Assembly: GCA_030390025.1 (NCBI GenBank)
Contig: CM059453.1
Coordinates: forward strand, 310,001 to 374,000
DNA length: 64,000 nucleotides
Source: Squalus acanthias
Lineage: Eukaryota
Direction of reading: 5' to 3'
How positions within the stretch are numbered: the first letter of the stretch is position 1; every line of letters begins with the position of its first letter. Positions 14,021 through 62,944 of the stretch are shown one piece after another. A model generated the notes under the pieces. That model saw only the letters and a program-made list of their open reading frames with translations. It searched no databases and was not told the origin of the DNA. Both the position numbers and the translations under genes were made by a program.

Positions 14021-14034
14021 GTCTTAATAATCAC

Positions 14035-15742: not shown

Positions 15743-15910
15743 AGGGACGATCAGTGTACAGAGGTTGGTCGTGGCGCTGCACAATCGAATAAACCAGCTC
15801 AGAATGACGAGATTGCGTACGCGACCGTCAATGTCTCCAAATTCCGCAAACATCATCAATATATTCAAAATGAGGAGACCTGCGAATATGCAGCAATTAA
15901 ACAGAACTGA
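15743..15910 (+). CDS. Siglec-like receptor exon 8, ITIM IAYATV, distal ITSM-like TCEYAAI, stop
   Basis: cttccgttacag acceptor, phase 0; RDDQ...DEIAYATVNVSK...EETCEYAAIKQN*; the 8 exons sum to 1632 nt, in frame. Confidence 0.85.
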   Translation, partial: RDDQCTEVGRGAAQSNKPAQNDEIAYATVNVSKFRKHHQYIQNEETCEYAAIKQN

Positions 15911-21295: not shown

Positions 21296-21495
21296 NNNNN
21301 NNNNNNNNNNNNNNNNNNNNNNNNNNNNNNNNNNNNNNNNNNNNNNNNNNNNNNNNNNNNNNNNNNNNNNNNNNNNNNNNNNNNNNNNNNNNNNNNNNNN
21401 NNNNNNNNNNNNNNNNNNNNNNNNNNNNNNNNNNNNNNNNNNNNNNNNNNNNNNNNNNNNNNNNNNNNNNNNNNNNNNNNNNNNNNNNNNNNNNN
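21296..21495. other. Assembly gap (200 N)
   Basis: Run of N next to a GATA/GACA microsatellite. Confidence 1.
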
Positions 21496-23394: not shown

Positions 23395-24010
23395 GTTTTA
23401 TATGTAGAATAACAGATACCTGGGAGTGAGTTACAGGCTGGAATCTAATGGAGAGTTACGGGGGTTTATATATAGAATATCAGATACCTGGGAGTGAGTT
23501 ACAAACTGGAATCTAATCGAGTAGTCGGGGGGTTTATATATAGAATAACAGATACCCGGGAGTGAGTTACAGGCTGGAATCTAATCGAGGAATTCGGGTG
23601 GTTTATATACAGAATAATAGAATCCCCGGAGTGCGTTACAGGCTGGAATCTAATCGAGGGGTTCGGGGGGTTTATATACACAATAACAGATACCTGGGAA
23701 TGAGTTACAGGCTGGAATCTAATCGAGGGGTTCGGGGGGTTTATATACACAATAACAGATACCTGGGAATGAGTTACAGGCTGGAATCTAATCGAGGGGT
23801 TCGGGGGTTGATATACAGAATTACAGAAACCCAGGAGTGAGTTACAGGCTGGAATCTAATCGAGTAGTCGGGGGTTTATATATAGAATGACAGATACCCG
23901 GGAGTGAGTTACAGGCTGGAATCTAATCGAGTAGTCAGGGGGTTTATATATAGAATAACGGATACTCAGGGAGTGAGTGACAGTTTGGAATCTAATCGAG
24001 GGGTTCGGGT
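23395..24010. repeat. 68-bp minisatellite, about 9 copies
   Basis: Unit tatatagaataacagatacccgggagtgagttacaggctggaatctaatcgagggg...; gatacc recurs at 23415, 23483, 23551. Confidence 0.95.
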
Positions 24011-24048
24011 TAATTATATCCTAATTGCCTCGCTGGTTTATATCACAG

Positions 24049-25590
24049 CTAACACATGCGCTCTGAGGGTGAAGTCTGAGCCAGGTATAATCTGCTACCA
24101 TGCTTCAATCACAGGTCTGTGCCAGGCTGGCAGCCACCGCACTATGAATGACATCGACGTTGAATGGAATGAAACAGCCAGTGATCCAATTCCTGATCAC
24201 TGTCGAGTGACCCCTTCCCAAATGTTCACCGTGCCCGTATCTTGGCTGGGTAAATCCAGGATCAGGAACAACTGTGAGTACGGAGCTCACTGGCAGTCAG
24301 TGCGCTTGAGTTACCAACGTCCACTGGATCCAAGAGAACAATTGAAAGTCCTATAACCGTGCGCTAGCGGAGTAGAAATTAATCGCAGGCGGTAGCATAA
24401 AACTGGCTTCATCGCATAGCAGGGAATTAAATAGTAAAAGGGGCGTATGAGAGGCGGCCGTTCCGTTATGCGCTTCTGTGCAAGACAAATCCCACTCCAA
24501 CGTGTTCTGAAACGGAAGGATACATTGGGAAGGGAAAAGAACAGTCAGTTAGTTGTAAATAGCTTTAGATCTCCCGTGTACTGACAGTGTGTCACGTGAT
24601 TAAATACAGTGGATCAACCGCGCCACCTACTGGTCGTAGCCAGATACTGCACATCCATCCGAACTCGCCATAATAACTATATTTACATGTCGCTAACAAA
24701 CAGAGTGCCAAGGTAAGAGAGACCAGTGTGAGTCTCTCTATCCACGTATGTTTTGTTTCCCAACAATGATTCTGTTTAAATCGAAGCAGAAAACGTTTTT
24801 GGTATCGCTTTGCCACGTGTTCTTTGTGCATCTCTATCACGTGTTCTTTGTCTATCTGTACCCCATGTTCTGATTGGATCAGTACCACGTGTTATTTGTG
24901 TATCTGTACCACGTGTTCTTTGTGTATCTGTACCACCTGTTCTTTGTTTATCTCTACCACGTGTTCTTATTGGATCGGTACCACGTGTTCTTGGTGTATC
25001 TGTACCACGTGTTCTTTGTGTATCTGTACCACGTGCTCTTATTGGATCGGTTCCACGTTTCCTTGTTGTAACTGTACCACGTGTTCTTTGTGTAACTGTA
25101 CCAACTGTTCTTTGTCTATCTCTTACACGTGTTCTTATTGGATCAGTACCACGTGTTATTTGTGTATCTGTACCACGTGTTCTTTGTGTATCTGTACCAC
25201 CTGCTCTTTGTTTATCTCTACCACGTGTTCTTATTGGATCGGTACCCCGTGTTCTTGGTGTATATGTACCACGTGTTATTTGTGTATCTGTACCACGTGT
25301 TCTTTGTGTATCTGTACCACCTGCTCTTTGTTTATCTCTACCACGTGTTCTTATTGGATCGGTACCCCGTGTTCTTGGTGTATATGTACCACGTGTTCAT
25401 TGTGTATCTGTACCACGTGCTCTTATTGGATCGGTTCCACGTTTTCTTGGTGTATCTGTACCACGTGTTCTTCGTCTACCTGTGCCACGTGTTATTTCTG
25501 TATCTGTACCACGTGTTCTCTTTTATATGCAGCACGTATTCTTTCTGTTGCAAAGACACGAGCGAATATGCAGCTATTAAATTTACCTGA
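24049..25590 (+). pseudogene. Decayed remnant of a gene 1 paralog (possible last Ig exon, TM-position exon, terminal exon)
   Basis: 25556-25590 encodes DTSEYAAIKFT*, with 19/20 nt identity to the gene 1 EYAAIK and the same stop position; upstream exons 24049-24320 and 24610-24712 are only weakly supported. Confidence 0.5.
24810..25520. repeat. 24-bp minisatellite, about 30 copies, with 120-bp higher-order unit
   Basis: Unit tgtgtatctgtaccacgtgttctt; lines starting 25201 and 25321 are identical. Confidence 0.95.
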
Positions 25591-25997
25591 AAAGGACCAG
25601 AACTTAGAGAGGACGCTTCCCTGAATTTCTAAAATTTCAGTTTATTTGTCTAAAGGAACCAATTATGACAACGAAGAGATACGACAAGTTTTTACATTCA
25701 AGACATTGGAAAAGCTCGTTGTTCTTGCTTGCAGTATTTTCCCTAATATTCTCCACTTCCAACTTGAACGCTTGCTGGAGTTCGATTTCTCCAATCTCTC
25801 GCTTAAGCTGCTTTTTTGCAGATGCATTGCTTCACCATGATGTTTCTACCGCGGCCCAATAACTCGGAGTCTGCTCCTGTCCTCACTGGATATCGAAAAG
25901 GCTACTTGCAGCAGGGTTCACTGAACAGCGATAAATACTATGGATGAATTGCCCCTCTCTAACCCAGGGCTCCGAGTCCATTTGGATTCCCTCAGCC

Positions 25998-28900: not shown

Positions 28901-29404
28901 GTTTGTTTCTTGCTGTCCCATCCGGTTGGGAATGCAGTGAGAGTAATCCAGAGAACAAGAGTTCAAATCCAAACATGGCAGTTTCAGAATGTGAATGCAG
29001 GTTTTACAAATCTGCACGTAAAAAACCTGGAATCTCAGAGAGTGACCTTATAGCTGGTGAATGCTACTCAGTCGAATCAAACTAAGTGCAGCCATGGATG
29101 AGAAAGAAATGCAGTCTCTGTCAGCCTCCATCTAGGTCGCGAGTCGAAAATTATTCTAAGCATGAAACTCAAGTTGAAATATTCGCACACCCAACATTTT
29201 ATTATTCCATCCTTTCAGAAGGATACAGAAGGAATCAGGATAAATATTTATGAAAGTTTAGCTGCGGTCGTGAAGGAAACTGGGGGAGGTTGTCACGAAG
29301 GTGAACGTTAATTTCACTGGGATGGGAGAGGCTGCAAAACTATCGCCGCCAGATGAAGAGAGAATCAACCCTGTCCGGCAGGGCAATTTAAGACGATAAT
29401 AGGG

Positions 29405-30665
29405 AGGGGTCCCGATCCAGAGACATGAGCAGAAACATCTAGGCTGGCACTCCAGTGCAGTATTGAGGGAGCGCTGCACTGTCGGATGGGCAGTACGGAG
29501 GGAGCGCTGCACTGTCGGATGGGCAGTACGGAGGGAGCGCTGCACTGCCGGAGGGCAGTACTCAGGGAGCGCTGCACTGTCGGAAAGGCAGTACCAAGGG
29601 AGCACCGCACTGTCGGAGGGGCAGTACTGAGGGAGCGCCGCACTGTCGGAGGGGCAGTACCGAGGGAGCGCCGCACTGTCGGAGGGGCAGTACCGAGGCA
29701 GCGCCGCACTGTCGGAAAGGCAGTACCGAGGGAGCACCGCACTGTCGGAGGGGCAGTACCGAGGCAGCGCCGCACTGTCGGAGAGGCAGTACCGAGGGAG
29801 CGCCGCACTGTCGGAGTGGCAGTACCGAGGGAGCGCCGCACTGTCGGAGGGGCAGTATTGAGGGAGTGCCGCACTGTCGGAAGGGCAGTTATGAGGGAGT
29901 GCTGCACTGTTGGAGGGGCAGTACCGAGGGAGCGCCGCACTGTCGGATGGGCAGTATTGAGGGAGCGCCGCACTGTCGGAGGGGCAGTAGTGAGGGAGCG
30001 CTGCACTGTTGGAGGGGTAGTTGAGGGGGCGCTGCACTGTTGGAGGGGCAGTACTGAGGGAGTGCCACACTGTTGGAGGGGAGGTACTGAGGGAGCGCCA
30101 CACTGTCGGAGGGGAAGTACTGAGGGAGCGCTGCACTTGTCAGAAGGGCAGCACTGAGGGAGCGCTGCACTGTCGGAGCGGCAGTACTGAGAGAGTGCTG
30201 CACTAACGGAGGGGCAGTACTGAGGGAGCGCTGCACTGTCAGAGCGGCAGTACTGAGGGAGCGCTGCACTGTCGGAGGGGCTGTACTGAGGGAGCGCTGC
30301 ACTGTCGGAGGGGCAGTACTGAGGGAGTGCTGCACTGTCGGAGGTGCCGTCTTTCGGATGAGACGTTAAACCAAGGCCCCGTCTGCCCTCAGGAGTGGAC
30401 GTAAAAGATCCCATGGCCACTATTTCGAAGAAGAGCAGGGGAATTATCCCCGGTGTCCTCGACCAATATTTATCCCTCAATCAACATGCCAAAAACAGAT
30501 GATCTGGTCATTATCACATTGCACTTTTTGGGAGCTTGCTGTGCCCCAATTGGCTGCCACGTTTCCTTCATTACAACAGTGACCACACTTCAAAAGTACT
30601 TAATCGGCTGTAAAGAACTTTGGGACTACCTGAAAGGCGCTATAGAAATGCAAGTCTTTCTTTTG
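29405..30665 (+). mobile_element. SacSINE1-type SINE containing an expanded 33-bp minisatellite
   Basis: SINE head and Deu core/tail flank the array. Confidence 0.88.
29457..30345. repeat. 33-bp GC-rich minisatellite, about 27 copies
   Basis: Unit cagtactgagggagcgctgcactgtcggagggg. Confidence 0.95.
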
Positions 30666-40566: not shown

Positions 40567-41805
40567 ACATAGATACATAGATACATAGAAGATAGGAGCA
40601 GGAGTAGGCCATCCGGCCCTTCGAGCCTGCTCCGCCATTTAATGTGATCATGGCTGATCCTCCAATTCAGTATCCCGTCCCCGCCTTCTCTCCGTAACCC
40701 TTAACCCCTTTTGCCTGTAGAAATATATCTAATTCCCTCTTAAATATATTTAATGAGCTGGCGTACACTGCCCTCTGTGGCAATGAGTTCCACAGGTTCA
40801 CCACTCTCTGAGTGAAGAAATTTCCCCTCATTTCTGTCCTAAATGGTTTAGCCCTTATCCTTAAATTATGTCCTCTAGTTCTGTTCTCACCCGCCAAGGG
40901 AAACATTCCTTCTGCATCTAGTCTGTCTAGACCTGTCAGAATTTTATACACTTCTATGAGGTCCCCTCTCAATCTTCTAAACTCCAGTGTGTACATCCCT
41001 AAACTACATAGTCTCTCCTCATAGGTCAATCCCGCCATTCCTGGTATCAGCCTGGTGAATCGCCGCTGCACCCCCTCCATGGCAAGAACATCTTTCCTCA
41101 GATGAGGCGACCAAAACTGTACACAGTACTCGAGGTGTGGTCTCACCAGTGCCCTGTACAGCTGCAGCAAGGTATCCCTGTTCCTGTATTCCAACCCTTT
41201 TGCTATGAAGGCCAGCATACCGTTTGCCTTCTTGACCGCCTGTTGCACCTGCATGCTCGCCTTCAGTGACTGGTGTACAAGAACACCCAGGTCTCTCTGT
41301 ACTTCCCCCTCTCCCAATTTATTGCCATTTAAATAATAATTTGCCCTCCCGTTCCTGCACCCAAGGTGGATAACTTCGCACTTGTCCACATTATAGTGCA
41401 TCTGCCATTTATCCGCCCAATCACCCAGTCTGTCCAAATCGCTCTGGAGCTTCCTGATCTCCTCCTCTGAGCCCACCCCCCCTCCTAGTTTGGTGTCGTC
41501 TGCAAATTTGGAAATGCTGCATCCGACTCCCTGATCCAGGTCATTAATGTAAATTGTGAACAGCTGGGGACCCAGGACAGATCCCTGTGGTACCCCGCTT
41601 GTTACTGCCTGCCATTCAGAAAATGAGCCGTTTATTCCAACTCTCTGTTTTCTATCTGACAGCCAGTTCTCTATCCACGTCAATACTTGCCCCTTTATCC
41701 CATGAGCTTCAATTTTCCATGCTAATCTTTTATGTGGGACCTTATCGAAGGCCTTTTGGAAGTCCAGGTACACCACATCCACTGACTCTCCCTCATCCAC
41801 TACTA
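40567..41805 (-). mobile_element. Young 5'-truncated CR1 LINE with uninterrupted RT
   Basis: Open frame with YLDFQKAFDKV, PQGSVLGP and FADD; (catagata)n tail. Confidence 0.95.
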
Positions 41806-41944
41806 AATGTTGTAAAAAGAAGGTTAAAAATCGCGATAAAGGAAACAAAGATTACGGACAGGAAGTCCACACTTACACAATGTTTGTACTCATTTCGATA
41901 CAGACATTTCTTATTTTCTCTGTATTCGCACGTTGTTTTCTCAG

Positions 41945-42082
41945 ATCCAACCAAGGCTTCGAAGAGAATTCCAATCATCACAGGTGCAACAGTCGGTCTG
42001 GCGGTGTTAGTTCTTGCCACGATTCTCATTGTTGTGCTGATCAAGAAAAAGCACAAGTCAGCAAAAGAAAAAGAGGAATCCG
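41945..42082 (+). CDS. ITAM receptor transmembrane exon (GC-AG donor)
   Basis: gttttctcag acceptor; DPTKASKRIPIITGATVGLAVLVLATILIVVLIKKKHKSAKEKEES; donor G|gcaagt, phase 1, matches the next exon. Confidence 0.85.
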
Positions 42083-42194
42083 GCAAGTACTGTTTTACAT
42101 TTTCAGTTATGGTGAGGTTCTTCTACCTATTCCATGGATCAATTTTACACAATTGTAGCGTCCAGTCTCCCACTCCCTCTCTTTCAAATATTCT

Positions 42195-42395
42195 AATCTC
42201 TCTCTCTCTCTCCCGCTGACGATCTATCTCTCTAGATTAATCTCTCGAGATTTATCTCTATATATTTATCTCTCTATAGAGATTAATCTCTCCAGATTTA
42301 TCTCTATATAGTGATCTATCTATCTATCTATCTATCTATATATTTCTCTGTCTATATACTTCGCTATCTGCATAGCTAACTCTCTATCTATCTAT
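42195..42395. repeat. TC/TCTA low-complexity microsatellite
   Basis: Direct reading of the sequence. Confidence 0.85.
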
Positions 42396-42739
42396 TGATC
42401 TTTTTAACTATCGTTATGTTATTCATAGTTTTACTTTCTTCCCTAGTCTTAATATTTTATGAAGGACATAAAGTGACCATACAATTGAGAGTTATCCACC
42501 CATTGAGCGAAATTTGCAAGAAAAAAATCAGAACAAGTTTCTGCAAAGAGGGATTAGAACTTTTCTATTTAATGTTTAACTGTTTCTTAAAGTGAGGTTT
42601 CTTCGTTGCCTCCTTCCCAATGGCTATCGATCAATCTTGGCTTCACAATCTCAGTGTGATGAACATTGGTGAGAAATGTTAAATTGATGGTGATAACAGT
42701 GTCATACTCAAATCTTGAACAAAGGAACAACATGTTTGT

Positions 42740-43090
42740 ACACAATGACTTGTGTAGTCACTGCTGTACTGTAGGAAACGAGGCCGGCCATATATGCACA
42801 GCAAGCTCCCACAAACAGCAATGAAATAAACATAAGTGTTGGGAAAGACACCTCGAGAACGTCCCTGCTCTTCTTTCGGTAGTGCCGTGGGGTCTTTGAC
42901 GTTTACCTGAAAGGGCAGAGAGGGCCACGGTTTAATGTGTCATGTGAAGGATGGCCCCTCGGACAGTGCAGCGCTCCCTCAGTACTGCACTGGGAATGTG
43001 AGCCCAGATGATGTGCTCACTTCGCTGGAGTGGGATTCGAATCGGCAACCGTGCGTCTCAGGGTGAGAGTACTACCACAGAATCAATGCT
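42740..43090 (-). mobile_element. SacSINE1-type SINE
   Basis: Reverse-complement homology including gacagtgcagcgctccctcagtactg. Confidence 0.8.
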
Positions 43091-43452
43091 AATGCCTCAC
43101 CTCAGCATCAATCGTTAGCACTCGACCCTCCCCGCAGAGTCAGATATCTAACACATGAATCTCAATGGGACAGTAGAATCCATAAGTAATAATCAAAAGC
43201 ACTATTGGTCAATAGCAGTGCGTTAGCAGACACGCTTCATAGAGGCGTAGACTCTATTTTAAGATAAAGTAGGGAATGCTGGAGGTAAACCGCCAGTCAG
43301 GCAGTATCTATAGAGAGAAAGGGAAGAGAGAGCTGTAGAATCTTCATCAGAATTAATGAGCTGGGCAACATCAGTATATTTAATGGCATTTTTCAGGCAG
43401 CACTGAAAACATGAATTTGCAATGATTCAACTCTCCTACTTTATCCTTTCAG

Positions 43453-43499
43453 AGGGACCCTACATCAACGTTCCTCCTCAAAGGAAGAAAACTGAGCAG
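43453..43499 (+). CDS. ITAM receptor cytoplasmic exon EGPYINVPPQRKKTEQ
   Basis: tcctttcag acceptor, CAG|gtgaat donor, phase 1 to 0. Confidence 0.8.
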
Positions 43500-44031
43500 G
43501 TGAATCCAATTGATATTTTGTCTCTTAAAGCTTTCCTTTTGAAAGTGGACAGCCATGTCGACAAACTAAATGGTGTGCTTCCAATCTTTGACTGAAACCG
43601 AGTCCCTAACCAGAAACTCGCACTCGAATCACAGTTTCAGGCAATAGCTTACCAACTCTTAGCTCCTTTAACTTAAGCGAGTTGACTTCTTAGTTACAAT
43701 ACCGGACAAGGCAACCGTAAAAACCACTGTGAAGCGCCTCCGCGCTATTATTTCAGACAGTTATACCCGGCCTATACCACGTACATCAATTGTTCCGATG
43801 CCTTTGAATCATTTCTCAGTAATTCCTTACAGACGGTGCATTAATTCCCTCTGTTATTTTCTGTGGAAAGAACTGCTGATTGTGTTTATTTCTGTAATTT
43901 TGAGCTCAATGTACTTTTGACACATTTCTACCCGCCTCTTTCCACGTGTATATCACCAGTGGTCTTTGCTCTTCTGTCGATGCTGATGTCTCAATGCTCC
44001 TGTACTTAACTTTAGAAACTTTATGTTCCAG

Positions 44032-44061
44032 GATGAATCTGATTTGAACTCCACTTACATG
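44032..44061 (+). CDS. ITAM receptor micro-exon DESDLNSTYM
   Basis: tgttccag acceptor, ATG|gtaagt donor, phase 0 to 0. Confidence 0.82.
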
Positions 44062-44163
44062 GTAAGTGTATGCAACAGTCATACGGTTTCCAGCACAACC
44101 TCGTTTTATCTCTGAATTATCGAGTGATCGGGAATGCTCACTTATTGTGCCATCTTCTCACAG

Positions 44164-44207
44164 GGTTTGAAGTTAGAGGAGCAATCGGTTTACAGCCAAC
44201 TGCAGAG
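44164..44207 (+). CDS. ITAM receptor exon GLKLEEQSVYSQLQ(R)
   Basis: ttctcacag acceptor, AG|gtatgt donor; completes YMGL-x7-YSQL. Confidence 0.85.
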
Positions 44208-44449
44208 GTATGTTATATACTGTTTAATTAATAGTTGGTCTATCTATCATCATCTATCTATCAATCAATCAATCTACATTTATATGCCTTCACAGTATTA
44301 CTTATCTTCACCATCTGAACTGCTTATGAATGTCCATTCAAAGCAATTATTGCTGGTTTCCTATTACAATAACTATTGCACTGTGTCCATTTATTTTACA
44401 CATATTGATCCTCTGGCAGTTACACATCTAACTCATTTTCCTTTTTCAG

Positions 44450-44453
44450 ATAA
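44450..44453 (+). CDS. ITAM receptor terminal exon (last base of Arg plus TAA)
   Basis: Strong acceptor ttttcctttttcag|A TAA, phase 2. Confidence 0.7.
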
Positions 44454-44689
44454 GGAGCTCGTATGTCTTCTGGGAATATTAGAACAAGCACAACTTATCC
44501 ACACCCGGAGAGTGTTCCATCCTCCACTGGGTGCTGCTACTACTCATGCTTTATGTGGGCTCGCTTATGGAAATTACGTTCTGAGGGACATTATATATAT
44601 ATCAGCGCTTCTGTTAGAAAAATAGTAAGAAAACGTTTTGAGTTAAAATCTTGCTGATAATGCATCTTTTAGGATATTTCCTCAACTAG

Positions 44690-45180
44690 AGCTCATCCAG
44701 AACTCTGCCGCCCGAATCCTAATTCACGTCAAGTCCCGTTCACCCATCACCCCCTGCACTCGCTGTACTTCATTGGCTCCCAATCCGGCAATGCCACGAT
44801 TTCAAAATTCTCATCCTTCTTTTCCAATTCCTCCATGGCACCGCCCCTGCTTATCAGTGTAACATCCTCCAACCCGCCGAGATCTCGGCACTCCTTAATC
44901 TGGCCTCCTGCTTATCACCAATTGTCTTCATTCACCATGGACGGCCGTGCCTTCCGCTCCTGAGAAATTAAGCTGTGGAATTCCCCTCCCCAAAACCCTC
45001 CCCCTTTCTACCTCACTCTCCTCCTTTAAGATGCTCTTGAAAACCTAAGTCTTTGACAAAGCATTTGGACACCTGTCATAATATCTCCACGTGGCCCATT
45101 GTCAAATTTTATTGGAAGCGCTTTGGGAGGTTTAATTACATTAAAGGCGCTATATGTGTGCAAGTTGTTGTTGTTTTGCC
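44690..45180 (+). mobile_element. L2-type LINE 3' end
   Basis: LIQNSAARIL...SPITP...LHWLP motif; tail aaaggcgctat...(ttg)n. Confidence 0.8.
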
Positions 45181-46727
45181 CTCTGAATTATATTAATATA
45201 CAGCTTTAATGTTTGTATACATTCCTACAGCAAAAATGCAGAGACTGCACGCAAGAGATGTAATGGTTTGTACATGATGCTCTGCAATAATCAATTATAT
45301 ATTAAACTGATGTACAGGTTCCACATTCTAATTGTACTGCACCAGTAGGGGGCTCTGTGAGGTAATGCTCTGTGACACAGAATATTGTGGGGTGTAAACA
45401 AACTGTATGTGACAGCCCACTACTAAGGCCTCAATTGTGCAGAGCCGCAACCACTAACGAAGGAATCGTAATATGGGCCGCCAAGTATCATTCCCGAGAG
45501 GAAATAATGTCCTCCCAAAATATGGTGTAGCTCTCACTTAAAGTGACAACTCGCGCAGAAATAAATCTCTCAATATATAAATCACCCATTCCCAAGAGCG
45601 TCAATCTGAACCCTTCCAGTAAATACTGAACTTAGTTTAAGTGGCAATCAGTGCAAGAACAAACCTTACTGATTGGACAAACCATGGAATGCAAACTACA
45701 CCTACCCGAGATGTAGCTTGTCAAGTGACAAGGCCTGCCCACTGACATGAAAATCATCTTGCTCAAACTCCCCAAAACTCACCCCCACTGTGACACAAAT
45801 AGGTCAGTGCTGCCTCCTGAATACAACAATGCCCACCTCAAATTATTCACATCGCTGGCCTCCACCCACTGTCCACTGACGGCACAATCACCTGCGAAAC
45901 TTTTGTCTTTCATCGTAGCTTCGAAATTAACGGGTCAGATATTAGAGTGGCCAGACGTAACGCCTTTCGATGACGCTGCTTTGAAAGCCACGATATCGTA
46001 GTTTTTAACTAATTTCTTTACAAGGCGTTCTGGAATCTTGAACACCCCCGATTTGAATCGCTCCAACATTGGTGGCCCTGCCTTCAGCTGCCAAAGACCT
46101 AAGCACTGCAATTCCCTCCCTAAACCTCTCCGCCTCTCCACGGCCCGGAAATCGGACCCGTTTGCACCGGCGTTTCAGGCCGGTTTGGAAGAAAAATGGG
46201 CTAAAATTGGAGAGAGCTGGAAACCTGCCAGTGCCACTGCAGGTCAGAGTTCACGGCCGCCGAAATTAACGGCACTGGCAGGAACGCAATATTGGTGCTG
46301 GCTGCTAATTAACATTATCCCAGCGCTAAACTTACCGTGCAAGGCCGCCTTTCCTGGCGGTAGTCTCAGCAGGAAGCCCAATTATGCGTCGCCATAGCGT
46401 CATTGCAGCTAGAACAGCCTTTTCTTAAAGCAAGACTGTCATTTTAGAATCAGTGCCATTCCTTAAAGGGGAACTGCCTTCTAAAATAAAAATCATTTAA
46501 AAATCAACCGTTTTTTTCGCTTATAGCTCAAATACCTTCTGAAAAAGATAAACATTAAAACGTGTTCTCAAATGCCAGTCTTCAGCTGTTAAAAATGAAT
46601 TGCCTCCCGAACCTTAAAAAATGGAATAAGGGCTTCAGCACGAACACAAATGGCTCTGCAAGCCAGGGAAGGGCATGCAGGGTCTTGCAGGCAGTACTCC
46701 AGCTTTGTGCAGGGCTTCAACACTGTA

Positions 46728-47650
46728 CATAGGAACAGGGGTAGGACATTCAGCCCCTCGAGCCTGTTCCACCATTCGATGAGGTTATGGCTGATCTACG
46801 ACCTAACTCTATATACCTGCCTTTGACCCATATACCTTAATACCTTTGGTTAACATAAAGCTATCAATCTCCGATTTCAAATTAACAATAGATGTAGTAT
46901 CAATTGCCCTTTGTGGAAAAGAGTTCCAACTTCTCCCACCCTTTGTACTTAGAAGTGTTTCCGAATTTCACTCCTGAAAGGTCTGGCTCTAATTTTTAGA
47001 CTATACCCCCTCGTCCTAGAATCCCCAAGCAAAGGAAATAGTGTCTCTCTATCTACCCTATCTGTTTCCCTTAATATCCTGAAAACTTCGATCAGATCAC
47101 CCCTTACCCTTCTAAATTCTAGGAAATACAACCCTAATTTATGTAATCTCTCCTTGTAACTTAACCCTTGAAGTTCGGGTATCATTCTGGTAACGCTATG
47201 CTGCACTCCCTCCTAGGCCAATCTATCTTTCCTAAGGTGTGATGCCCAGAACTGCTCACAGCACTCCAGGTGTGGTCTAACCAGGGCTTTGAATAGATAC
47301 AGCATAACTTCTACCCCCTGTATTCTAGTCCTCTAGATATAAAGGCCAGCATTCCATTAGACTTTTTGATTATTTTCCGTACCTGTTTATGACATTTTAA
47401 TGATCTATGTACCTGAACCCCCAAATCTCTTTGGATATCTACTGCTTTTAGCATTTTACCATTTCGAAAGTACCCTGTTCTATCCTTTTTAGGTCCAAAG
47501 TGCATGAAATCATATTAGCTTACATTGAAATCCATCTGCCACAGTTTTGACCCCTCACATAATCTATTAATATCCCTTTGTAATTTTATGCTTTTGTCTA
47601 CACGGCCTACAATGCCACCTATCTTTGTGTTATCGGCAAATCTGGATATA
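46728..47650 (-). mobile_element. CR1 LINE fragment
   Basis: RT C-terminal peptides in ORFs 46949-47206 and 47311-47505. Confidence 0.9.
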
Positions 47651-55300: not shown

Positions 55301-58300
55301 TGTCTCGCCTGAAGATTCTATACCCCGGAATAATGAGCTGCCAGTCCTGCCCCTCTCTCAACCACGTCTCTGTGATAGCAACAATATCATACCCCCATGT
55401 GTTCATCAACACCTTCAATTCATCTGCCTTACTCGCAAGACTCCTTGCATTAAAATAAATGCCATCCAGCCTTGCCATACTCCCTTGTGCCGTTACATAT
55501 TTGCTCTGCCTTCCAGGCTGACTTGTTTGTTCCTCTATATTTGGCTGTGCATCACCCCCTACTATAGCTCCACTCCGTATCCCATCCCCTGCCAAGTTAG
55601 TATAAACCCCGCCCCCACCCCCCCAACAGTACTAGCATACCTCCCCGCAAGGATGTTGGTCCCGTTCCGGTTCAGGTGCAACCCGTCCAACTTGTACAAG
55701 TCCCACCTTCCCCAGAAGCAGACCCAGTGATCCAGGAAACTAAAGCCCTCCCTGCTGCACCAACTCTTTAGCCACGCATTCATCTGTTCTATCCTCCTAT
55801 TCCAAAAGTCACTAGCACGTGGCACCGGGAGTAATCCAGAGATTACAATCTTTGAGGTCCTGCTTTTTAATCTGCTACCTAGCTCCCTAAATTCTTGTTG
55901 TAGGACCTCATCCCTCTTTCTACCCATGTCGTTGGTACCAATGTGAACCACGACCTCTGACTGTTCGCCCTCTCCCTTCAGAATACCCTGCAGCCGTTCA
56001 GTGACATCCTTGACCCTGGAGGCAACATACCATCCTGGAGTCACGTCTGCGGCCACAGAAAAGTTTATCTGTTCCCCTTACGACAGAATTCCCTACCACT
56101 ATTGCTCTCCCACTCTTTTTCCTCCACTCCTGTGCAGCTGAGCCACTCGTAGTGCCACGGACTTGGCTCTTTTTGCATCCCCCTGAGAAACAATCTCCCC
56201 CAGCAGTATCCAAAACAGAAAATCTGTTGGAGAGGGAGTTGGATCCAGGGGACTCCTGCACTACCTTCCTAGTTCTTTTACTCTGTCTGGCGGTCACCCA
56301 TTTCCTTTCTGCCGGTACACTGTTTACCTGTGGTGTGACCACTTCGTTAAACGTGCTATACACGAAGATCTCAGCTTGCGGATGCTCCCTGACTCACCCA
56401 ACTCGCAGCACTCTGTTTAAAACGCACTTAGTGCAAAATCGCCCTTCAAAGCCTGGTTTTATAGGCCCTGAAACAAAGGAGCATGCTGGGTTCGGCTAGA
56501 GGAGAACCAGTTTAATCTAGTTTCCCTAATTAACTGCCTTCAGCTGCTCTGAATGGTAGGCCTTGTATATCCCTTTATAACCCTGATTAAAGCTGGGAAA
56601 TTTAGATTTTAAACAGTAAACAGTAACAGTAAATGTGAAACAAACAAAAGTTTGATTTTAGCAAACATTTAAGACTCCCTTACTCACCCAACTCGCAGCA
56701 CTCTGTTTAAACCGCACTCAGTGTGTCCTACCCTGTAACCTGAGACTGATCCCTCGTTCTAGACACCCCTGCCAGGGGAAACATCCTCCCTGCTTCCAGT
56801 CTGTCTTGCCCTGTCAGAATTTTATACGTTTCAATGAGATTCCCTCTCATTCTTCTAAACTCTAGTGAATACAGGCCTACTCGATCCAATTTCTCCTCAT
56901 ACAACAGTCCTGCCATCTCAGGAATCAGTCTGGCGAACCTTCGCTGTACTCCCTCTATGGCAAGTATATCCTTTCTTAGGTAAGGAGACCAAAACTGCCC
57001 ACAGTACTCCAGGTGTGGTCTCACCAAGGCCTTGTATAACTGTAGTAAGACTTCCTTGCTCCTGCACTCAAATTCTCTTGCAATGAAGGCCAACTTACCA
57101 TTTGCCTTCCTAACTGCTTCCTGCACCTGCATGTTGCTTTCAGTGACTAGTGTACAAAGACACCCAGGTCTCTCTGTACATCAACATTTCCCAATCTATC
57201 ACCACTTAATAAATACACTGCCTTTCTGGTTTTCCTACCAAAGTGGATAACTTCACATTTATCCACGTTCTACTGCATCTGCCATGTATTTGCCCACTCA
57301 CTCAACTTGTCTAAATCGCCTTGAAGCCTCTTTGCATCCTCCTCGCAACTCACAATCCCGCCTAGTTCCATTTCGTTAGCAAACCTTGAAATAATACATT
57401 TGTTTCCCTCATCCAAATCATTGATCTATTTTGTGAATAGCTGAGGCCAAAGCACTGATCCCTTCGGTACCCCACTAGTCACTGCCTGCCACCCCGAAAA
57501 AGACCCATTTATTCCTACTCTCTGTTTCCTGTCTGTCAAACAATTTTCAATCCATGCCAGTATATTCCCCCAATCCCATGTGCTTTAATTTTGCACACTA
57601 ACCTCTTATGTGGGACTTTATCAAAGGCCTTCTGAAAATCCAAATACACCACATCCACTGGTTCTCCCTTATCTATTCTAGCAGTTACATCCTCAAAAAA
57701 CTCCAGTAGGTTTGTCAAATACGATTTCCCTTTCATAAATCCATATTGACTTTGTCTATTCCCCTTCATATTTTCTTAGTGTCTTGTTATCACATCCTTT
57801 ATAATACACTGTAGCATTTTCCCTACTACTGATGTTAGGCTAACCGGTCTGTAGTTCCGTGTTTTCTCTCTCCCTCCTTTTTTAAATAGTGGGTTCCATA
57901 TGCCACCCTCCAACCTGCAGGAACTGTTCCATAATCCATAGAATTTTGGAAGATGACAACCAATGCATCCACTATTTCCATGGCTGCCTCTTTTAAGTAC
58001 TTTAGGATGCAGATTATCAGGCCCTGGGGATTTATCGGCTTTCAGTCCCATTAATTTCTCCAGCACTAATTTATTGCTAATACTAATTTCTTTTAATTCC
58101 TCCTTCTCACTAGACCCTTGGTTCCCTAGCATTTCTGGGTAGTTATTTGTGTCCTCTTCCGTGAAGACAGAACCAAAGTATTTGTTTAATTGCTCTACCA
58201 TTCCTTGTTTCCCATTATAAATTCTCCCGTTTCTGACTGTAAGGGACCTACATTTGTCTTCACTACTCCTTTTCTTTTTACATACTTGTAGAAGCTTTTA

Positions 58301-58470
58301 CAGTCCACTTTTATGTTCGATGCAAGTTTACTCTCATGCTATATTTTTCCCCTCTTAATCAATCTCTTGGTCATTTTTTGCTGAACTTGAAACTGCTCCC
58401 AATCCTCAGGCTTGCTACTTTTTTCTGGCAACTTTATATGACTCCACTTTGGATCTAATACTACCTCTTT
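52312..58470 (-). mobile_element. CR1 LINE (host) split by a second CR1 insertion
   Basis: 3' end at 52312-52585 resumes at about 56728 with RT peptides. Confidence 0.85.
52586..56727 (-). mobile_element. Near full-length degenerate CR1 LINE (ORF1 SGNH esterase, ORF2 endonuclease-RT)
   Basis: IVVGNSVVRG, VVVHIGTND and DGLHLN (ORF1); YFNARS, ITETWL, YYRPP, GDLN, PQGSVLGP and FADD (ORF2); multiple frameshifts. Confidence 0.93.
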
Positions 58471-59303
58471 GTATCTAATACTACCTCTTTGGATCTAATA
58501 CCAATACAATTAGACGAGGAAGGATGGGGAAAGGCTCAAGAGGAGCATAAACGCCGGCATGGTCTGCTTGGACCGAATGGCCTGTTTCTCTGCTGTGTAT
58601 TCTACGTAATTCTATGTAACATTTTCAGCCAATAGTCCTGCTTCCTGGTTCGAGCCAGACCTGCTATTCTCATGCGAGGTGGAATCGCTTTATGTGATAA
58701 CACATCAACATTAATTATAAGATAGCATCGGGGTAACATAGAGGCCAGTCGCATTTCCGAGGCAGAGTTAACGCGTCCACTAATGCTAAATAACGCAGAT
58801 TAAAATATTTGTTCAGAAGTATTGAATTATAACTACGTTACCGTTTCACTAAGAAAAATATTCCTTTTGAATCGCTGTAGGATCCAATCACATCTGACGT
58901 TACGTTTGCAAACATCTCCCTGTTTGCGCACATCTGACGTTGAGCGGGCTGGGGGAGGGGAGCAGACAGCAAGATGCTGTCAGCCTCCATGTTCCGCTTC
59001 CTCTGACCACACAGGACACAGTTCTCTGCAGCTGAAAGGCTCACAGTGAAGCACAAAGTGTTGGAGATGGTTAAATGCAAAACGACTAAAGAAATAAACT
59101 AGATAAGGAGACACTGGGATAATATGGGGTCGGAAACTCAGCTCAGGGTCAAATAGGACGCCAAGGTTGCGAACGGTCAGCTTCAGACTCAGGCAGTTGC
59201 CAGGGCGAGGGATGAATTCGGTGGATAGGGAACGGAGGGTAAAGGTGGATATTTATCCAGCTGTGTCCGGTCCGGTTTAATATCACACTTTACTCCTGCG
59301 CAG

Positions 59304-59659
59304 GTACCGCTGAGGATGGAGATCATGAAGATGTTCCGGAAGTGATTTTTTCGAACGGGTCCAGTCTGGTTTTGCTGCCTTGTTCCGCGCAGTCTCACAC
59401 CCACATTACACAGATTCAGTGGATATTTGAACCTGCCTCAGGAAACAATAGGAGAGAATTTGTACTATTGATGACAGCACCCCTCAGTGCAGCTCCCCGC
59501 GGTTCCCGCATATAACACTGGCTGAGACTGATGGTTTCAGGACGGGGAATTACTCTCTTTTGTTCACAGCGACAATGGAAGATGCCGGAAATTACAACTG
59601 TTTTCTGTATCCTGAACACCTGAACAAAAGGATGAAAATCCGCCTCATAGTGATTAATG
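59304..59659 (+). pseudogene. IgSF gene 3 V-set exon with one frameshift near 59450
   Basis: LVLLPCSAQ...IQWIFEP in one frame, RICTIDDSTPQC...GFRTGNYSLLFTATMEDAGNYNC in another; canonical ag/gtgagt boundaries; 356 nt. Confidence 0.8.
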
Positions 59660-59974
59660 GTGAGTTACTGAAACCAGTTTATGGTGTAGTTATATGTGTA
59701 TGAAAGTCTCTGACACAAACTGTTTCACCATTTTCCGTATTTGCGCCAATGTTCCGTTAAACACCGGTTCATTAAATACCAGAATTGTGGTCATTTGTTA
59801 CGTGGAAAAACGTAGCATTAAAACACTCAGCAATTTACTCATCTTTATTGAGAAAACTAGAAGAAATCCCGCAGTAAAGTCTCAACCGGTAAAGATCGGT
59901 TCCATTTCTGCAACTTTCCCTCAGCACTTCTGCTCAATACTCACTGGGGTAGAAATTTACTTCAATGGAGCTGA

Positions 59975-61485
59975 ATATCGGGCGGCGGGTGTAACAGGCG
60001 GCCAATACATTACCACACGTTCTACGCTGTCGTTTAAGATGAATTTCCAGCCCACAGGCTCGGTCTACTGAGGTTCCAATATGGCGGGCAGGAAACGTGT
60101 GTACATTTGTGACTGGAAGTGCGCCGCCTGGCATATTGGGTAAGAGCGAACTAGAAGCGTCCTTGACCCATGCCTGAAACAGGTGTTAGGCTCTTTGCAT
60201 TTGTTACTTTGAGGCCCCCTCTGTAAGATTGGTTTATCATGAGGCAGCCAGGGCCCTCACCAGATGCACTCTTCGAAACCAGCTCTAGGTGTTGCCTGCA
60301 ACAAAGAAGCTAACAAATAAAAGTCCCCAAATTAAAGGAACCCATCGCACCTCCGACGCCCCCCTCCCCGTCGCTCCAAACCCGACCTGCTGATCCCGGG
60401 ACCCTGACCCCCTACATCCTAGATCCAGGCCCTGATCCCTGACTAAGTTCAATCCCTGATCTGAGGCCCAGACCTCTATCGTCGAGCCCCAACCATGGCT
60501 GTGAACCCGATCACCGATCCATGCCCCCATCCCCGATTCTCGACTCCGGCCCCAATCTCCGACATTTGAAACAGGCCATTTTCACCGAATGCAGAACCCC
60601 GTCCCAAACCCAGACCCCTGACCCCAGCTTCAATCCCCGATACAAGCCCAGACCCCTGATCCCCGACCAAGGCAAGGATTCCCGAACCTGGTCTTCACCG
60701 GCGAGCTCCTTCTGGAACCCAGCATGTGCCTGCAGCACATTGGTCTGACATTAATGAGGTCCATGGCCAGATGGGCCTACCTGTTTAGAGGTTGTGCCTG
60801 TCCTGATAGAGTAGTTATTATGCACTGTGTAATAGTGGTGAGTATGAGGAGAAGGAGCCAAAGTGGTTTGGTGCATTGATTTCAGGAGAGTGAAGGGAAA
60901 CGGGGTGGTTGTATTGTGAGTATTTTAAATAATGTTGCTGGTAATGGTAGAGCTGTGAGCGTAGAGAAAGAGCAGTATCGATACCTTGACAACTCTCGTG
61001 AGGCCATTGAAGTTCTTTCAGCATGGGAGCCACGTGCTGGGATGTACGTTCCTTGCCTTGATCTCTTCAGCGACCTCTCCTCACTGGCGGTGGAGGTGTT
61101 TGGTGAACAGGATGTCCCTCCTCCCGTCCACTGTCTGCATTAGTGCCACCAACGTGACATTGGAGAACCTTGGGGCCCTACCTGGCTCGCTTTCAGCAAT
61201 ATTATCCCTCTGACAACGTTTCCCGCTGTCTGTAGCCAAAGTGCACCTCCCTTTTAAGAGTTGCTGACTGCCTTTAAGGGGCGTGAGACACACTCGTTTT
61301 CGGGACCTAACCCGAAACACGAAAAATGCCACTAAACAGCGGGGAAGCGCTGCCGTCACGTGAATCATTTAATGAGTTCCGAGCACGAATTTAAGGTGGT
61401 GCCTGGGACTATGTGACGTGGCGCATGCAGCATGTGCGCCTGCCCCCTGTGCGCTCGTGTTCGGCTGCGAATGCAGTTCTGGGCC
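59975..61485 (-). mobile_element. Harbinger-derived element with Myb/SANT-like remnant
   Basis: RAPRFSNVTLVALMQTVDGRRDILF and KNFNGLTRVVK on the minus strand; boundaries approximate. Confidence 0.55.
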
Positions 61486-61540
61486 AAAATTTAATCTGTG
61501 GTGTCTTTTGTCAGTTTAACCAGTTATCCTCTTCCCACAG

Positions 61541-61846
61541 TGTCTGTGACCCCAAACGGCCCGATTCCCCTGGGAACCTCCATAAATCTGACCTGTGAGA
61601 TGTCCGACCCATCATATTTCAACAGTATCGATTGGAGCATTGAAAATACCCAAGTAACTGCGAAAGGGAATAGAATCCAGTGGAAACTGAACAACGCGCT
61701 AATTCATAAAGACAAGCGGCACACGTTCGATTTCAGAAGTTTAAACATCAGCAATTTTCAACTCCACGATGCGGGACGCTACACATATACCGTAAGATTG
61801 AAGAATGGAAAGTTTTGCTCTTATAGCCGTCTCTTGGAGATATCAG
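61541..61846 (+). CDS. IgSF gene 3 C2-type exon (F-strand Cys replaced by Tyr)
   Basis: cttcccacag acceptor, G|gttagt donor; VSVTPNGPIPLGTSINLTCEMS...W...LNISNFQLHDAGRYTY. Confidence 0.8.
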
Positions 61847-62708
61847 GTTAGTCCGCATCTCAAACAATACTTCCATTTGCCTGCGATGATTGATATCAAT
61901 AACTCCCCAGTTTCACTGTTAGAAAAGTGAAGTTGGCAGCCGGCTCTTTCCTGCATGGTGCTGAGCTCCCCGAGTGCATTCAGCCGACTGGTGAGTCTTC
62001 CATTTCACACCGCACTTGAGCAATGAGGAGGGAGAAACAGCTTCGAGGAGTCAGGAGGTGATCCAAATCACCGCACAGAACCCAGCCTCTGCCCTCCTCC
62101 TGGATCCACAGTGGTCTGTTTAAGCTTCCGGTCAGTGATGACTCCCAGAATGCTACCAGCCGGCTGGGAAATGGTGGTGCTGTTGAAGGTCATGGGGAGG
62201 CAATGATCATTCTCTTGTTCCATTTCAATAGGTCAACACCTCAGTTTGATTATTTGGCAGAGTAATATCAATTAATGAGTTTCGTGCCCGAAATGTAACC
62301 TGAGCTGTTTTATGCTGATCTGTTCTCTGAGATAGTAGAGCCTGAGCACGTTCTAAACTCTATTGGACACCCTGGAACCTTGCTTAAAAAGGCTTCAAAT
62401 CCAAAGATTACAATCCTTATCTCCAGAAACCAATGTTTGTGTATATGTTTTAGTCTGTTCTTCAGATGCAGATGACGCTGGTAAGACCGTGTTTATTGCC
62501 CATTCCTAGTTGCCCCAAGGCAGTAAGATTCAACCACCTAGTAAGGGACTGGAGTCACATGTAGGTCCTTCCCTGAAGGACATGAGTCAATCATTTGGGT
62601 TTTCATCATGTATGGAGAGCTTCCATCAGTTTGGTGTCAATTTTCAGCCCCAGTGTCTATTTTGTTCAAATTGGTTTACTCATATTAATGTTTTCATATT
62701 TTTTATCG

Positions 62709-62759
62709 GAACTGCACCAACCTCTCTCACTACAGAGAATCCGCGGACAGGAAGATCAG
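62709..62759 (+). CDS. Possible stalk exon of gene 3 (acceptor reads CG)
   Basis: Long T tract, GTAPTSLTTENPRTGRS, donor CAG|gtgaaa, phase 1 to 1. Confidence 0.35.
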
Positions 62760-62944
62760 GTGAAACTTTTCTTTCATGAAATCCACGTTTCCTTTGTGCT
62801 TCTTGCTGTCGTGTAGCTGATTTCACCAGCAGAGAGCAGAGTGAAAAGGCTGAGGTGATTTGCAGTGAACAGGTTGTTGCATTCACGAACAGTACCCAGA
62901 GGAAGTGTGTGTAGGTGTTAATTATAAAGTGAGCAGAAAAGAAC

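What the first reader, a model, noticed from the sequence alone, without database searches (positions are those of the whole stretch)
41945..44453. Hidden, intact ITAM plus YINV signalling module with no recognisable ectodomain
Seen: five small exons, invisible as a unit in the ORF track, splice in phase to DPTKASKR-[uncharged TM]-KKKHKSAKEKEESEGPYINVPPQRKKTEQDESDLNSTYMGLKLEEQSVYSQLQR*. This contains YMGL-x7-YSQL. Established: YxxL-x6-8-YxxL is an ITAM; a phase-0 intron inside the first YxxL also occurs in FcR-gamma/CD3-type genes; pYxN binds Grb2. Inference: this is an activating receptor that signals through its own tail, comparable to teleost G6F-like or CEACAM3. Every exon is open, yet I found no leader or Ig exon in the 16 kb upstream, so its ectodomain source is unexplained.
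Basis: partly seen in the sequence, partly recalled or inferred. Interest (0 to 1): 0.85.

Follow-up and report, generated by a model that had tools for sequence, protein, structure and literature searches.

The report
Expressed shark ITAM receptor tail
These five small exons are real and are spliced into RNA: they encode the membrane anchor and activating signalling tail of an immune-type receptor in a probable shark, and the outer part of that receptor lies somewhere I could not locate rather than being absent.

Summary
They give an uncharged TM, a basic stop-transfer, YINV, then YMGL-x7-YSQL and a stop.

Spliced contigs from four public runs (two studies, two coded organisms) carry these junctions. 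Introns 1, 2 and 4 are joined in 4 of 4 runs and intron 3 in 1 of 4. Intron 1 is GC-AG.

"No ectodomain" is only half right. No Ig exon lies in the 26 kb upstream, but one RNA contig carries 145 further letters 5' of exon 1. That upstream exon seems to end in TCAG. No exon of the complete ITIM-bearing Siglec-like gene at 2-16 kb ends that way. A 200-N gap sits at 21.3 kb.

The tail's layout matches teleost G6f-like: YxN, then an ITAM split by a phase-0 intron. Xenopus activating CEACAM tails share it.

Most likely this is the 3' half of an activating Ig-superfamily receptor. The scan noted the same stretch again (s1-890775) as a possible tail switch.

I rate it a new member of a known kind, of moderate interest.

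The parts
41945..42082 (+). Exon E1. It encodes an 8-residue outer juxtamembrane piece, a 25-residue uncharged TM, and KKKHK plus an acidic/basic stretch. It enters and leaves in phase 1 and has a GC donor.
   Evidence: sequence, translation; joint 42081/2>43452/3 in 4 of 4 runs; X2 record 11 lies on 41941-42081; only sub-threshold Pfam matches, all to single-pass TM/juxtamembrane models (TM_ErbB1 0.0022, Syndecan 0.0086).
42083..43452 (+). Intron 1, GC-AG, 1370 nt. It holds a CTAT-type microsatellite and a high-copy repeat at about 42780-43170.
   Evidence: table 5 (ends GG..CA with one ambiguous letter, which reads as GC..AG) and table 2 (very high depth over 42779-43172).
43453..43499 (+). 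Exon E2 (47 nt, phase 1 to 0), carrying GPYINV: a YxN site of the Grb2 SH2 type.
   Evidence: joint 43499>44032 (GT..AG) in 4 of 4 runs.
44032..44061 (+). Exon E3 (30 nt, phase 0 to 0), ending in ..NSTYM. This is the first half of the first ITAM YxxL.
   Evidence: joint 44061>44164 (GT..AG) in X2 only (1 of 4). X3 shows an odd 44062>44504 record.
44164..44207 (+). Exon E4 (44 nt, phase 0 to 2), GLKLEEQSVYSQLQ. This is the second half of the ITAM.
   Evidence: apart from hits in the intron-1 microsatellite and one weak minus-strand hit (11377-11412), the only half-ITAM exon-like hit in the window; joint 44207>44450 in 4 of 4 runs.
44450..45160 (+). Exon E5. It supplies the last base of the Arg codon, the TAA stop (44451-44453) and the 3' UTR. 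The 3' end is inferred, not shown.
   Evidence: contigs lie on 44448-44664 and 44546-45087/8, and depth falls after about 45090. ATTAAA near 45140 followed by a GT-rich stretch (my reading).

Best explanation
This is the transcribed 3' half (stalk end, transmembrane helix and about 77-residue cytoplasmic tail) of a type I activating immunoreceptor gene in a probable shark. The receptor signals through its own tail. Inferred mechanism: when the still unlocated ectodomain is clustered, Src-family kinases phosphorylate the two ITAM tyrosines (YMGL, YSQL). A Syk-family kinase then docks by its tandem SH2 domains. The phosphorylated YINV site recruits Grb2. The layout is TM, then YxN, then an ITAM at the C-terminus with the first YxxL split by a phase-0 intron. 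That is the layout of teleost G6f-like and of Xenopus activating CEACAMs. The 5' exons exist in the mRNA but are not in the resolved DNA between 16 and 41.9 kb. They lie either in or behind the gap at 21296-21495 or further upstream, across a transposon-filled intron of at least 20 kb. Shown: the exons, the splicing, presence in RNA, and the existence of a 5' exon. Inferred: membrane topology, kinase and adaptor binding, an Ig-type ectodomain, and G6f-like kinship (about 0.3 on its own).
For: Exon structure and frames. Splicing: with introns 1, 2 and 4 joined in 4 of 4 runs from 2 studies and 2 coded organisms, and intron 3 in 1 of 4. RNA origin: joint contigs have depth 40.9-166.3, while unspliced intron contigs have 2.9-19.6 (tables 5 and 8); equal depth would be expected from DNA. 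5' exon: X2 record 11 is 316 letters long and only letters 146-286 lie on 41941-42081. Possible constraint, from my hand sums table 8: non-repeat intron pieces differ from the window at 19 of 731 letters (organism A) and 33 of 1026 (organism B), E1 differs at 1 of 138 and 2 of 141, and no difference is listed in E2-E4 although rows of depth 4 are listed. Layout like G6fL: passages and the Constructs section of PMC3528668 give YxN at Y499 and ITAM at Y515/Y527, with the ITAM split over two exons. The mutagenesis primers there read ..Y-MDLK.. and ..DV-Y-KELER.., against Y-MGLK and SV-Y-SQLQR here. Xenopus CEACAM tails: the legend of Additional file 1 of PMC5112662 describes a phase-0 split of YxxL plus conserved YxNx. 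TM character.
Against: No ectodomain or leader exon was found. All 34 + strand open frames of 81 aa or more between 16.9 and 41.3 kb that are free of N and do not cover E1 lack any Ig-type Pfam match at E<=1. tblastn with the window's seven Ig/V pieces finds nothing there. E1 has no relative in any protein search: one search gave one spurious repeat protein, and searches were blank for lengths 25-383 aa. Conservation is therefore shown only in two close relatives (2.6-3.2% intron difference). The runs are labelled 'RNA?' as a guess. The canonical acidic residue at -3 of the first ITAM tyrosine is N here. Similarity to G6fL rests on a few residues read from primers. The YxN-to-ITAM spacing differs (21 versus 16). 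The spliced protein as a whole was not searched.
Confidence: 0.6

Rival explanations
1. Tail switch. E1-E5 would be an alternative 3' block of the upstream Siglec-like gene (leader 1963-2005, V 2642-3022, three Ig exons up to 7586). The same ectodomain would then carry either its own TM plus ITIM tail (8406-8499, 15743-15910) or this ITAM tail 34 kb further on.
For: Both lie on the same strand. The last Ig exon ends in phase 1 and E1 starts in phase 1. No other Ig exon lies between them. The two TM segments share 8 of 15 residues, which is not significant (E 0.13-0.56). Note s1-890775 of this scan raised the same idea.
Against: The one informative contig (X2 record 11) matches the genome from 41941. 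Its upstream exon therefore ends in TCAG. The gene-1 exons end in GGAG (leader), TTAG, AAAT, CAAC, AAGG and AAAG (TM exon). Gene 1 also has its own complete TM, ITIM tail and stop codon. A scaffold gap lies between the two. This rests on one contig of one run.
Confidence: 0.12
2. Free-standing adaptor. The upstream exon(s) would encode only a start codon and a leader or a few residues. The product would then be a small membrane protein with almost no ectodomain that lends ITAM and Grb2 docking sites to other receptors.
For: No Ig exon lies within 26 kb upstream. 145 letters of upstream transcript is a plausible size for a 5' UTR plus a leader exon.
Against: The TM has no charged residue. The 8 outer residues hold no cysteine. 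Both differ from what I recall of DAP12, FcR gamma and CD3 zeta. No leader-like exon ending in TCAG|GT was found in 1-41944.
Confidence: 0.13
3. Transcribed relic. The tail of a broken or rearranged receptor gene would still be spliced, but behind a non-coding or transposon-derived first exon, so no functional receptor is made.
For: The upstream 26 kb is full of LINE fragments and tandem repeats. A LINE reverse-transcriptase frame on the other strand ends 94 nt before E1. All protein database searches with E1 were blank.
Against: All frames and splice sites are intact. The same splicing occurs in two organisms. Fewer differences are listed in the exons than in the introns. Contig depth is well above that of the introns.
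Confidence: 0.1

Closest known systems
Teleost G6f-like (G6fL), the ITAM-bearing collagen receptor of fish thrombocytes (PMC3528668: abstract, passages and Constructs section seen. Ohashi et al. 2010 was not held; only its title was seen in reference lists.)
   Same: Single TM and a short tail with a Grb2-type YxN N-terminal to an ITAM near the C-terminus. [quoted passage not shown] Local residues agree beyond the motif: M at +1 and K at +4 of the first ITAM tyrosine, and V at -1 and R at +5 of the second. The zebrafish residues were read by eye from the published mutagenesis primers.
   Different: G6fL has four Ig-like domains; here no ectodomain exon is located. The YxN-to-ITAM spacing is 21 residues here against 16. 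The ITAM spacer is x7 against x8. Orthology, thrombocyte expression and collagen binding are untested. That G6F-like is linked to CD4/LAG-3 and to 19q-type genes is my recollection of the 2010 abstract, not something I saw.
Xenopus activating CEACAMs, and mammalian CEACAM3 (PMC5112662: abstract, passages and the legend of Additional file 1 seen; the file itself is closed)
   Same: Multi-exon cytoplasmic tails in which the YxxL of the ITAM or ITAM-like motif is split by a phase-0 intron, with a conserved YxNx Grb2-type site. They sit in paired-receptor clusters beside ITIM-bearing relatives.
   Different: No CEACAM-type N domain was found here. The neighbouring ITIM gene has a Siglec-type V domain (PDB sialoadhesin 9e-13), not a CEACAM one. 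No tail alignment could be made.
ITAM adaptors DAP12, FcR gamma and CD3 zeta (features recalled, from no call)
   Same: An ITAM whose first YxxL is split by a phase-0 intron.
   Different: Those adaptors have an acidic residue in the TM and a cysteine in a very short ectodomain. This TM is uncharged, and the 8 outer residues seen have no cysteine.

Membership tests
ITAM-bearing signalling tail | Two YxxL/I motifs 6-8 residues apart (6-12 in PMC3528668) | tested here: met
   YMGL-x7-YSQL across E3/E4. The junction is seen in X2.
ITAM-bearing signalling tail | First YxxL split by a phase-0 intron (called characteristic in PMC5112662 and PMC3528668) | tested here: met
   E3 ends ..TAC ATG|gt and E4 starts ag|GGT TTG.
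ITAM-bearing signalling tail | Acidic residue at -3 (D/ExxYxxL/I, as the consensus is written in PMC5112662) | tested here: not met
   The residue at -3 is N. Acidic residues sit at -5, -7 and -8.
ITAM-bearing signalling tail | Phosphorylation-dependent binding of Syk/ZAP-70; Grb2 binding at pYxN | not testable with these tools
   Needs phosphopeptide pull-down or a reporter assay.
G6f-like (G6fL) | Four extracellular Ig-like domains | tested here: inconclusive
   No Ig exon between 16 and 41.9 kb. A 5' exon exists in RNA but was not seen. A gap lies at 21296-21495.
G6f-like (G6fL) | Short tail with YxN followed by an ITAM that is split over two exons | tested here: met
   against the passages of PMC3528668.
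G6f-like (G6fL) | Sequence kinship of tail and TM with G6fL/G6F | tested here: inconclusive
   Only short primer-derived stretches could be compared by eye. The joined protein was not searched. E1 alone finds nothing.
G6f-like (G6fL) | Expression on thrombocytes; collagen response | not testable with these tools
   The runs are coded and their tissue is unknown.
Siglec (as the activating partner or isoform of the upstream gene) | This tail spliced to a Siglec-type V-set ectodomain | tested here: not met
   The upstream exon in X2 record 11 ends in TCAG. No gene-1 exon ends that way. The basis is one contig.
DAP12 / FcR gamma / CD3 zeta type adaptors | Charged (acidic) residue within the TM (feature recalled) | tested here: not met
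   IPIITGATVGLAVLVLATILIVVLI holds no charged residue.
CEACAM activating receptors | IgV-like N domain exon upstream of the TM and ITAM exons | tested here: inconclusive
   No V-set match in the 34 open frames tested. The upstream exon is unseen.

The most novel reading that the evidence does not exclude
The mRNA's upstream exon encodes only a start and a leader. The product would then be a free-standing membrane adaptor carrying an ITAM and a Grb2 site, with an uncharged TM and almost no ectodomain. I know of no described adaptor of that kind (from recollection). It would have to pair with receptors by means other than a charged TM residue.
Probability: 0.12. Interest if true: 0.7.

Novelty: new member of a known kind. 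Interest (0 to 1): 0.4.

Why it matters
Receptors that carry their own ITAM together with a Grb2 site are described in teleosts (G6f-like, a thrombocyte collagen receptor) and in frogs (activating CEACAMs). An intact, expressed tail of the same design in a cartilaginous fish would place this design, including the phase-0 split of the ITAM, at the base of jawed vertebrates. It would also give a handle on what activates shark thrombocytes or leukocytes. In the paper library searched, no paper pairs G6F with shark, cartilaginous, chondrichthyan, elasmobranch or catshark terms except as a cited reference. For genome annotation, it is an example of a well-expressed receptor 3' end that is cut off from its 5' exons by a transposon-filled intron and a gap.

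Tried and rejected
Protein searches with E1, all blank. HMMER against 1.84 billion representatives returned only a 631-aa repeat protein at E 1.6e-05, which I take as spurious. Word-index searches covered candidate lengths 55-175 aa, 120-383 aa and 25-80 aa. Longer proteins could not be reached. E2-E4 (15, 10 and 14 residues) are too short for any search tool.

Looking for the 5' exon in the window. All TCAG|GT sites upstream of E1 were listed (12 sites; sites with a GT or GC donor and 25 or more open codons). None has a good donor with a credible coding or leader frame. A leader-like scan found only the gene-1 leader at 1963-2005 and nothing convincing in 16-41.9 kb. The only Ig exon ending in TCAG|GT is 61495-61848, which lies downstream of the tail. 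I treat that as a weak lead to the type of exon, not as the partner.

Tandem duplication. blastn of 58001-64000 against the whole window gave no non-self match at 1e-5.

Other ITAM exons in the window: none.

Classifying the downstream V/Ig pair. Pfam gave nothing for the V pieces. PDB gave MXRA8 at 9e-06 and LAG-3 at 0.007 for the second half of the V, nothing for the first half, and only generic Ig hits for the second exon. The ESM Atlas gave only generic V-set clusters. The WxC motif that PMC10768021 section 3.6 calls typical of CD4/LAG-3 D2/D4 is absent from 61495-61848 (W-S-I).

Findings look-ups by sequence and for 'YINV' gave nothing.

Ohashi et al. 2010 is not held. Supplements are closed: Additional file 1 of PMC5112662 (tail alignments with exon phases) and the supplementary files of PMC10768021 might bear on the comparison and were not seen.
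Full report
1. THE OBSERVATION. The window is repeat-rich vertebrate DNA with one 200-N run at 21296-21495. At the stated place the + strand holds five exons:
- E1, 41945-42082
- E2, 43453-43499
- E3, 44032-44061
- E4, 44164-44207
- E5, from 44450

Translated one exon at a time, they give:
- E1: DPTKASKRIPIITGATVGLAVLVLATILIVVLIKKKHKSAKEKEES
- E2: GPYINVPPQRKKTEQ
- E3: DESDLNSTYM
- E4: GLKLEEQSVYSQLQ

The split codons are G|AG (Glu) and AG|A (Arg), and TAA follows at 44451-44453. The E1 donor is GC (G|gcaagt); using the nearby GT instead would run into a stop (my reading). The first Asp needs a G from the preceding exon. E1 contains no ATG, so the start codon must lie upstream. E1 gives only sub-threshold Pfam matches, all to single-pass TM/juxtamembrane models. 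A motif scan of all six frames found no second ITAM-type exon in the window; the other hits lie in a CTAT microsatellite or are weak.

2. RNA EVIDENCE. The look-up of sequencing runs listed 8 runs from 2 studies and 2 coded organisms that hold 0.16-0.32 of the sampled words. All are labelled 'RNA?' as a guess. I laid 4 of these 8 (X1-X4, two per organism) on 41400-47300. The contigs show these joints:

| Intron | Joint | Ends | Runs |
|---|---|---|---|
| 1 | 42081>43452, one ambiguous letter, so 42082>43453 | GC..AG | 4 of 4 |
| 2 | 43499>44032 | GT..AG | 4 of 4 |
| 3 | 44061>44164 | GT..AG | 1 of 4 (X2) |
| 4 | 44207>44450 | GT..AG | 4 of 4 |

X3 instead shows a record joining 44062 to 44504 with non-canonical ends. 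I take this as a contig whose short E4 piece could not be placed, but I cannot show that.

The joint contigs have depths of 40.9-166.3. Contigs lying unspliced in the introns have 2.9-19.6. The tool warns that contig depth is a poor measure. Still, equal depth would be expected from DNA, so I read these runs as RNA with some pre-mRNA.

Against the window, non-repeat intron pieces differ at 19 of 731 letters (organism A: records 1, 18, 20) and 33 of 1026 (organism B: records 12, 26, 27). These are my hand sums from table 8. E1 differs at 1 of 138 letters in A. In X2 it differs at 2 of 141: 42051 G>A, which is synonymous and seen in all four runs, and 42019 A>G, which is Thr to Ala in the TM and is seen in X2 but not in X4 of the same organism. 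No difference is listed in E2-E4. The table is truncated (114 rows not shown) but does list rows of depth about 4. This suggests, rather than proves, purifying selection among close relatives.

3. WHERE IS THE ECTODOMAIN? X2 record 11 is 316 letters long. Letters 146-286 lie on 41941-42081 and the last 30 lie on E2. So 145 letters of transcript lie 5' of E1 and are not in 41400-41940. The mRNA therefore has at least one further exon.

The match begins 4 letters before the exon start, so that upstream exon appears to end in TCAG.

On the same strand, at 2-16 kb, lies a complete receptor gene:

| Part | Position | Evidence |
|---|---|---|
| Leader candidate | 1963-2005 | |
| V exon | 2642-3022 | Pfam V-set 1.3e-09 and Ig_CD22 4.4e-07; PDB sialoadhesin 9e-13, MAG, Siglec-5, CD33, |
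| Three Ig exons | ending near 5526, 6369 and 7586 | |
| Own TM exon | 8406-8499 | |
| Last exon, with IAYATV and CEYAAI before a stop | 15743-15910 | |

Its exons end in GGAG, TTAG, AAAT, CAAC, AAGG and AAAG. None ends in TCAG.

Between 16 and 41.9 kb I found no Ig exon. tblastn with the window's seven Ig/V pieces gave nothing better than E 0.1 there. There are 39 + strand open frames of 81 aa or more starting in 15950-41900. Three of them span the N run and two cover E1. The other 34 were all scanned against Pfam, and none gave an Ig-type match at E<=1. C2-type exons shorter than 81 codons could have been missed.

None of the 12 TCAG|GT sites upstream of E1 has a good donor with a credible frame. 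The only Ig exon in the window that ends in TCAG|GT is 61495-61848. It lies 17 kb downstream of the tail, so it cannot be the partner in this assembly. Four letters are a weak clue at best.

The interval is filled with LINE fragments and tandem repeats. The 5' exons are therefore in or behind the gap, or further upstream.

4. DATABASES. E1 found no relative. One spurious repeat protein came out of 1.84 billion representatives. The spliced model was searched exon by exon only. In practice that meant E1 alone, since E2-E4 are below every tool's size limit. The joined protein was not searched.

5. WHAT IT RESEMBLES. PMC3528668 (abstract, passages and Constructs section) describes zebrafish G6f-like as follows:
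- It has four Ig-like domains, one TM and a short tail.
- The tail has a Grb2-binding YxN (Y499) and an ITAM (Y515, Y527).
- Both ITAM tyrosines are needed for signalling to collagen in a reporter line; the YxN tyrosine is not.

The present tail has the same order. The spacings are 21 and 11 residues, against 16 and 12 in zebrafish.

Read by eye from the published mutagenesis primers, the zebrafish sites are ..NI-Y-ENPD, ..AV-Y-MDLK.. and ..DV-Y-KELER... Here they are GP-Y-INVPP, ST-Y-MGLK.. and SV-Y-SQLQR. Four non-motif positions agree. That is suggestive only.

The legend of Additional file 1 of PMC5112662 states that in Xenopus CEACAMs the YxxL of ITAM and ITAM-like motifs is characteristically split by phase-0 introns. 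It also states that YxNx sites are conserved in most ITAM-bearing members. So this design is not unique to G6f-like.

First-stage notes of this scan list many Siglec-like paired receptors and receptors with intrinsic ITAMs elsewhere in this genome. One note describes a four-domain gene of CD4/LAG-3/G6F-like architecture on another piece (s1-890662). These are unchecked leads.

The downstream V/Ig pair at 59.2-61.8 kb is V-set-like. Its second half matches PDB MXRA8 at 9e-06 and LAG-3 at 0.007. Its second exon lacks the WxC motif that PMC10768021 (sections 3.1, 3.2 and 3.6 read) calls typical of CD4/LAG-3 D2/D4.

My recollection that the 2010 G6F-like paper reports linkage to CD4/LAG-3 and to 19q-type genes could not be checked, because the paper is not held.

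6. MECHANISM. Shown here: an intact, spliced, expressed open frame for a TM helix and a tail with the three tyrosine motifs. Inferred from established knowledge of ITAM and pYxN signalling, and from the G6fL experiments in PMC3528668:
- Clustering leads to phosphorylation of both ITAM tyrosines by Src-family kinases.
- A Syk-family kinase then docks.
- Phospho-YINV recruits Grb2.

The uncharged TM argues that no charged-residue pairing with an adaptor is needed.

7. RIVALS.
- Tail switch of the upstream Siglec-like gene (0.12). It fits strand and phase. The TCAG junction and the gene's own complete 3' end speak against it.
- Adaptor without an ectodomain (0.13). Nothing seen excludes it, but it lacks the charged TM and the cysteine that I recall as typical of such adaptors.
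- Transcribed relic (0.10). The intact frames, the shared splicing in two organisms and the low number of exon differences speak against it.

8. VERDICT. "No ectodomain" reflects a long transposon-filled intron and a gap, not a stand-alone module. The same stretch was noted a second time in this scan as a possible tail switch (s1-890775). I rate it a new member of a known kind: an Ig-superfamily-type activating receptor with an intrinsic ITAM plus YxN, closest in layout to G6f-like. Interest is 0.4. It would rise if the 5' exon proves it a shark G6f-like orthologue or an ectodomain-less adaptor.

Noticed in passing
window 1963-15910 (+): A complete inhibitory Siglec-like receptor gene. It has a leader candidate (1963-2005), a Siglec-type V exon (2642-3022; PDB sialoadhesin 9e-13), three Ig exons, a TM exon (8406-8499) and a last exon with IAYATV and CEYAAI before the stop (15743-15910). 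The TM exon ends in phase 2 and the last exon reads in phase 0, so at least one small cytoplasmic exon between 8.5 and 15.7 kb was not located.
   Followed up: partly
window 7657-7716 (+): About 60 nt just after the fourth Ig exon repeat that exon's last 20 codons (70% identical at protein level, E 0.005). This is a small local duplication that includes a ..GCAG|GT site.
   Followed up: no
window 59243-59700 (+): A V-set exon whose open frame changes by one letter around 59450-59512. This is either a broken gene or an assembly indel. Its second half matches PDB MXRA8 (9e-06) and LAG-3 (0.007), and its start has an ..IFxxG..VxLPC pattern like the D1 start described for CD4/LAG-3.
   Followed up: partly
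window 61495-61848 (+): An Ig exon with a B-strand cysteine and the tryptophan, but Y-T-Y-T-V where the F-strand cysteine is expected and a cysteine further on (..KFCSY..). It lacks WxC. It ends in ..ATATCAG|GT, the only Ig exon end in the window that fits the junction letters seen in RNA upstream of E1.
   Followed up: partly
window 21296-21495: A 200-N run flanked by simple GATA/CTAT-type sequence. It is the only unresolved stretch between the Siglec-like gene and the ITAM tail. I did not fill it.
   Followed up: no
window 40670-41851 (-): A 394-codon open LINE reverse-transcriptase frame on the opposite strand that ends 94 nt before the E1 acceptor. Further LINE fragments lie at 9.8-12.6, 36.4-38.2, 46.9-47.7 and 52.7-58.3 kb.
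   Followed up: no
window 23500-25620 and 29260-30480: Two long tandem-repeat blocks that stay open in several frames on both strands (periodic peptide repeats in the ORF list).
   Followed up: no
window 42019 and 42051: 42051 G>A (synonymous) is seen in all four runs. 42019 A>G (Thr to Ala inside the TM) is seen in X2 but not in X4, which is labelled as the same organism. This looks like a polymorphism.
   Followed up: no
window 44062-44504: In run X3, one contig joins 44062 to 44504 with non-canonical ends (TA..CA) instead of showing the E3-E4 and E4-E5 joints. It is probably a placement artefact of the short E4, but an alternative 3' form is not excluded.
   Followed up: no
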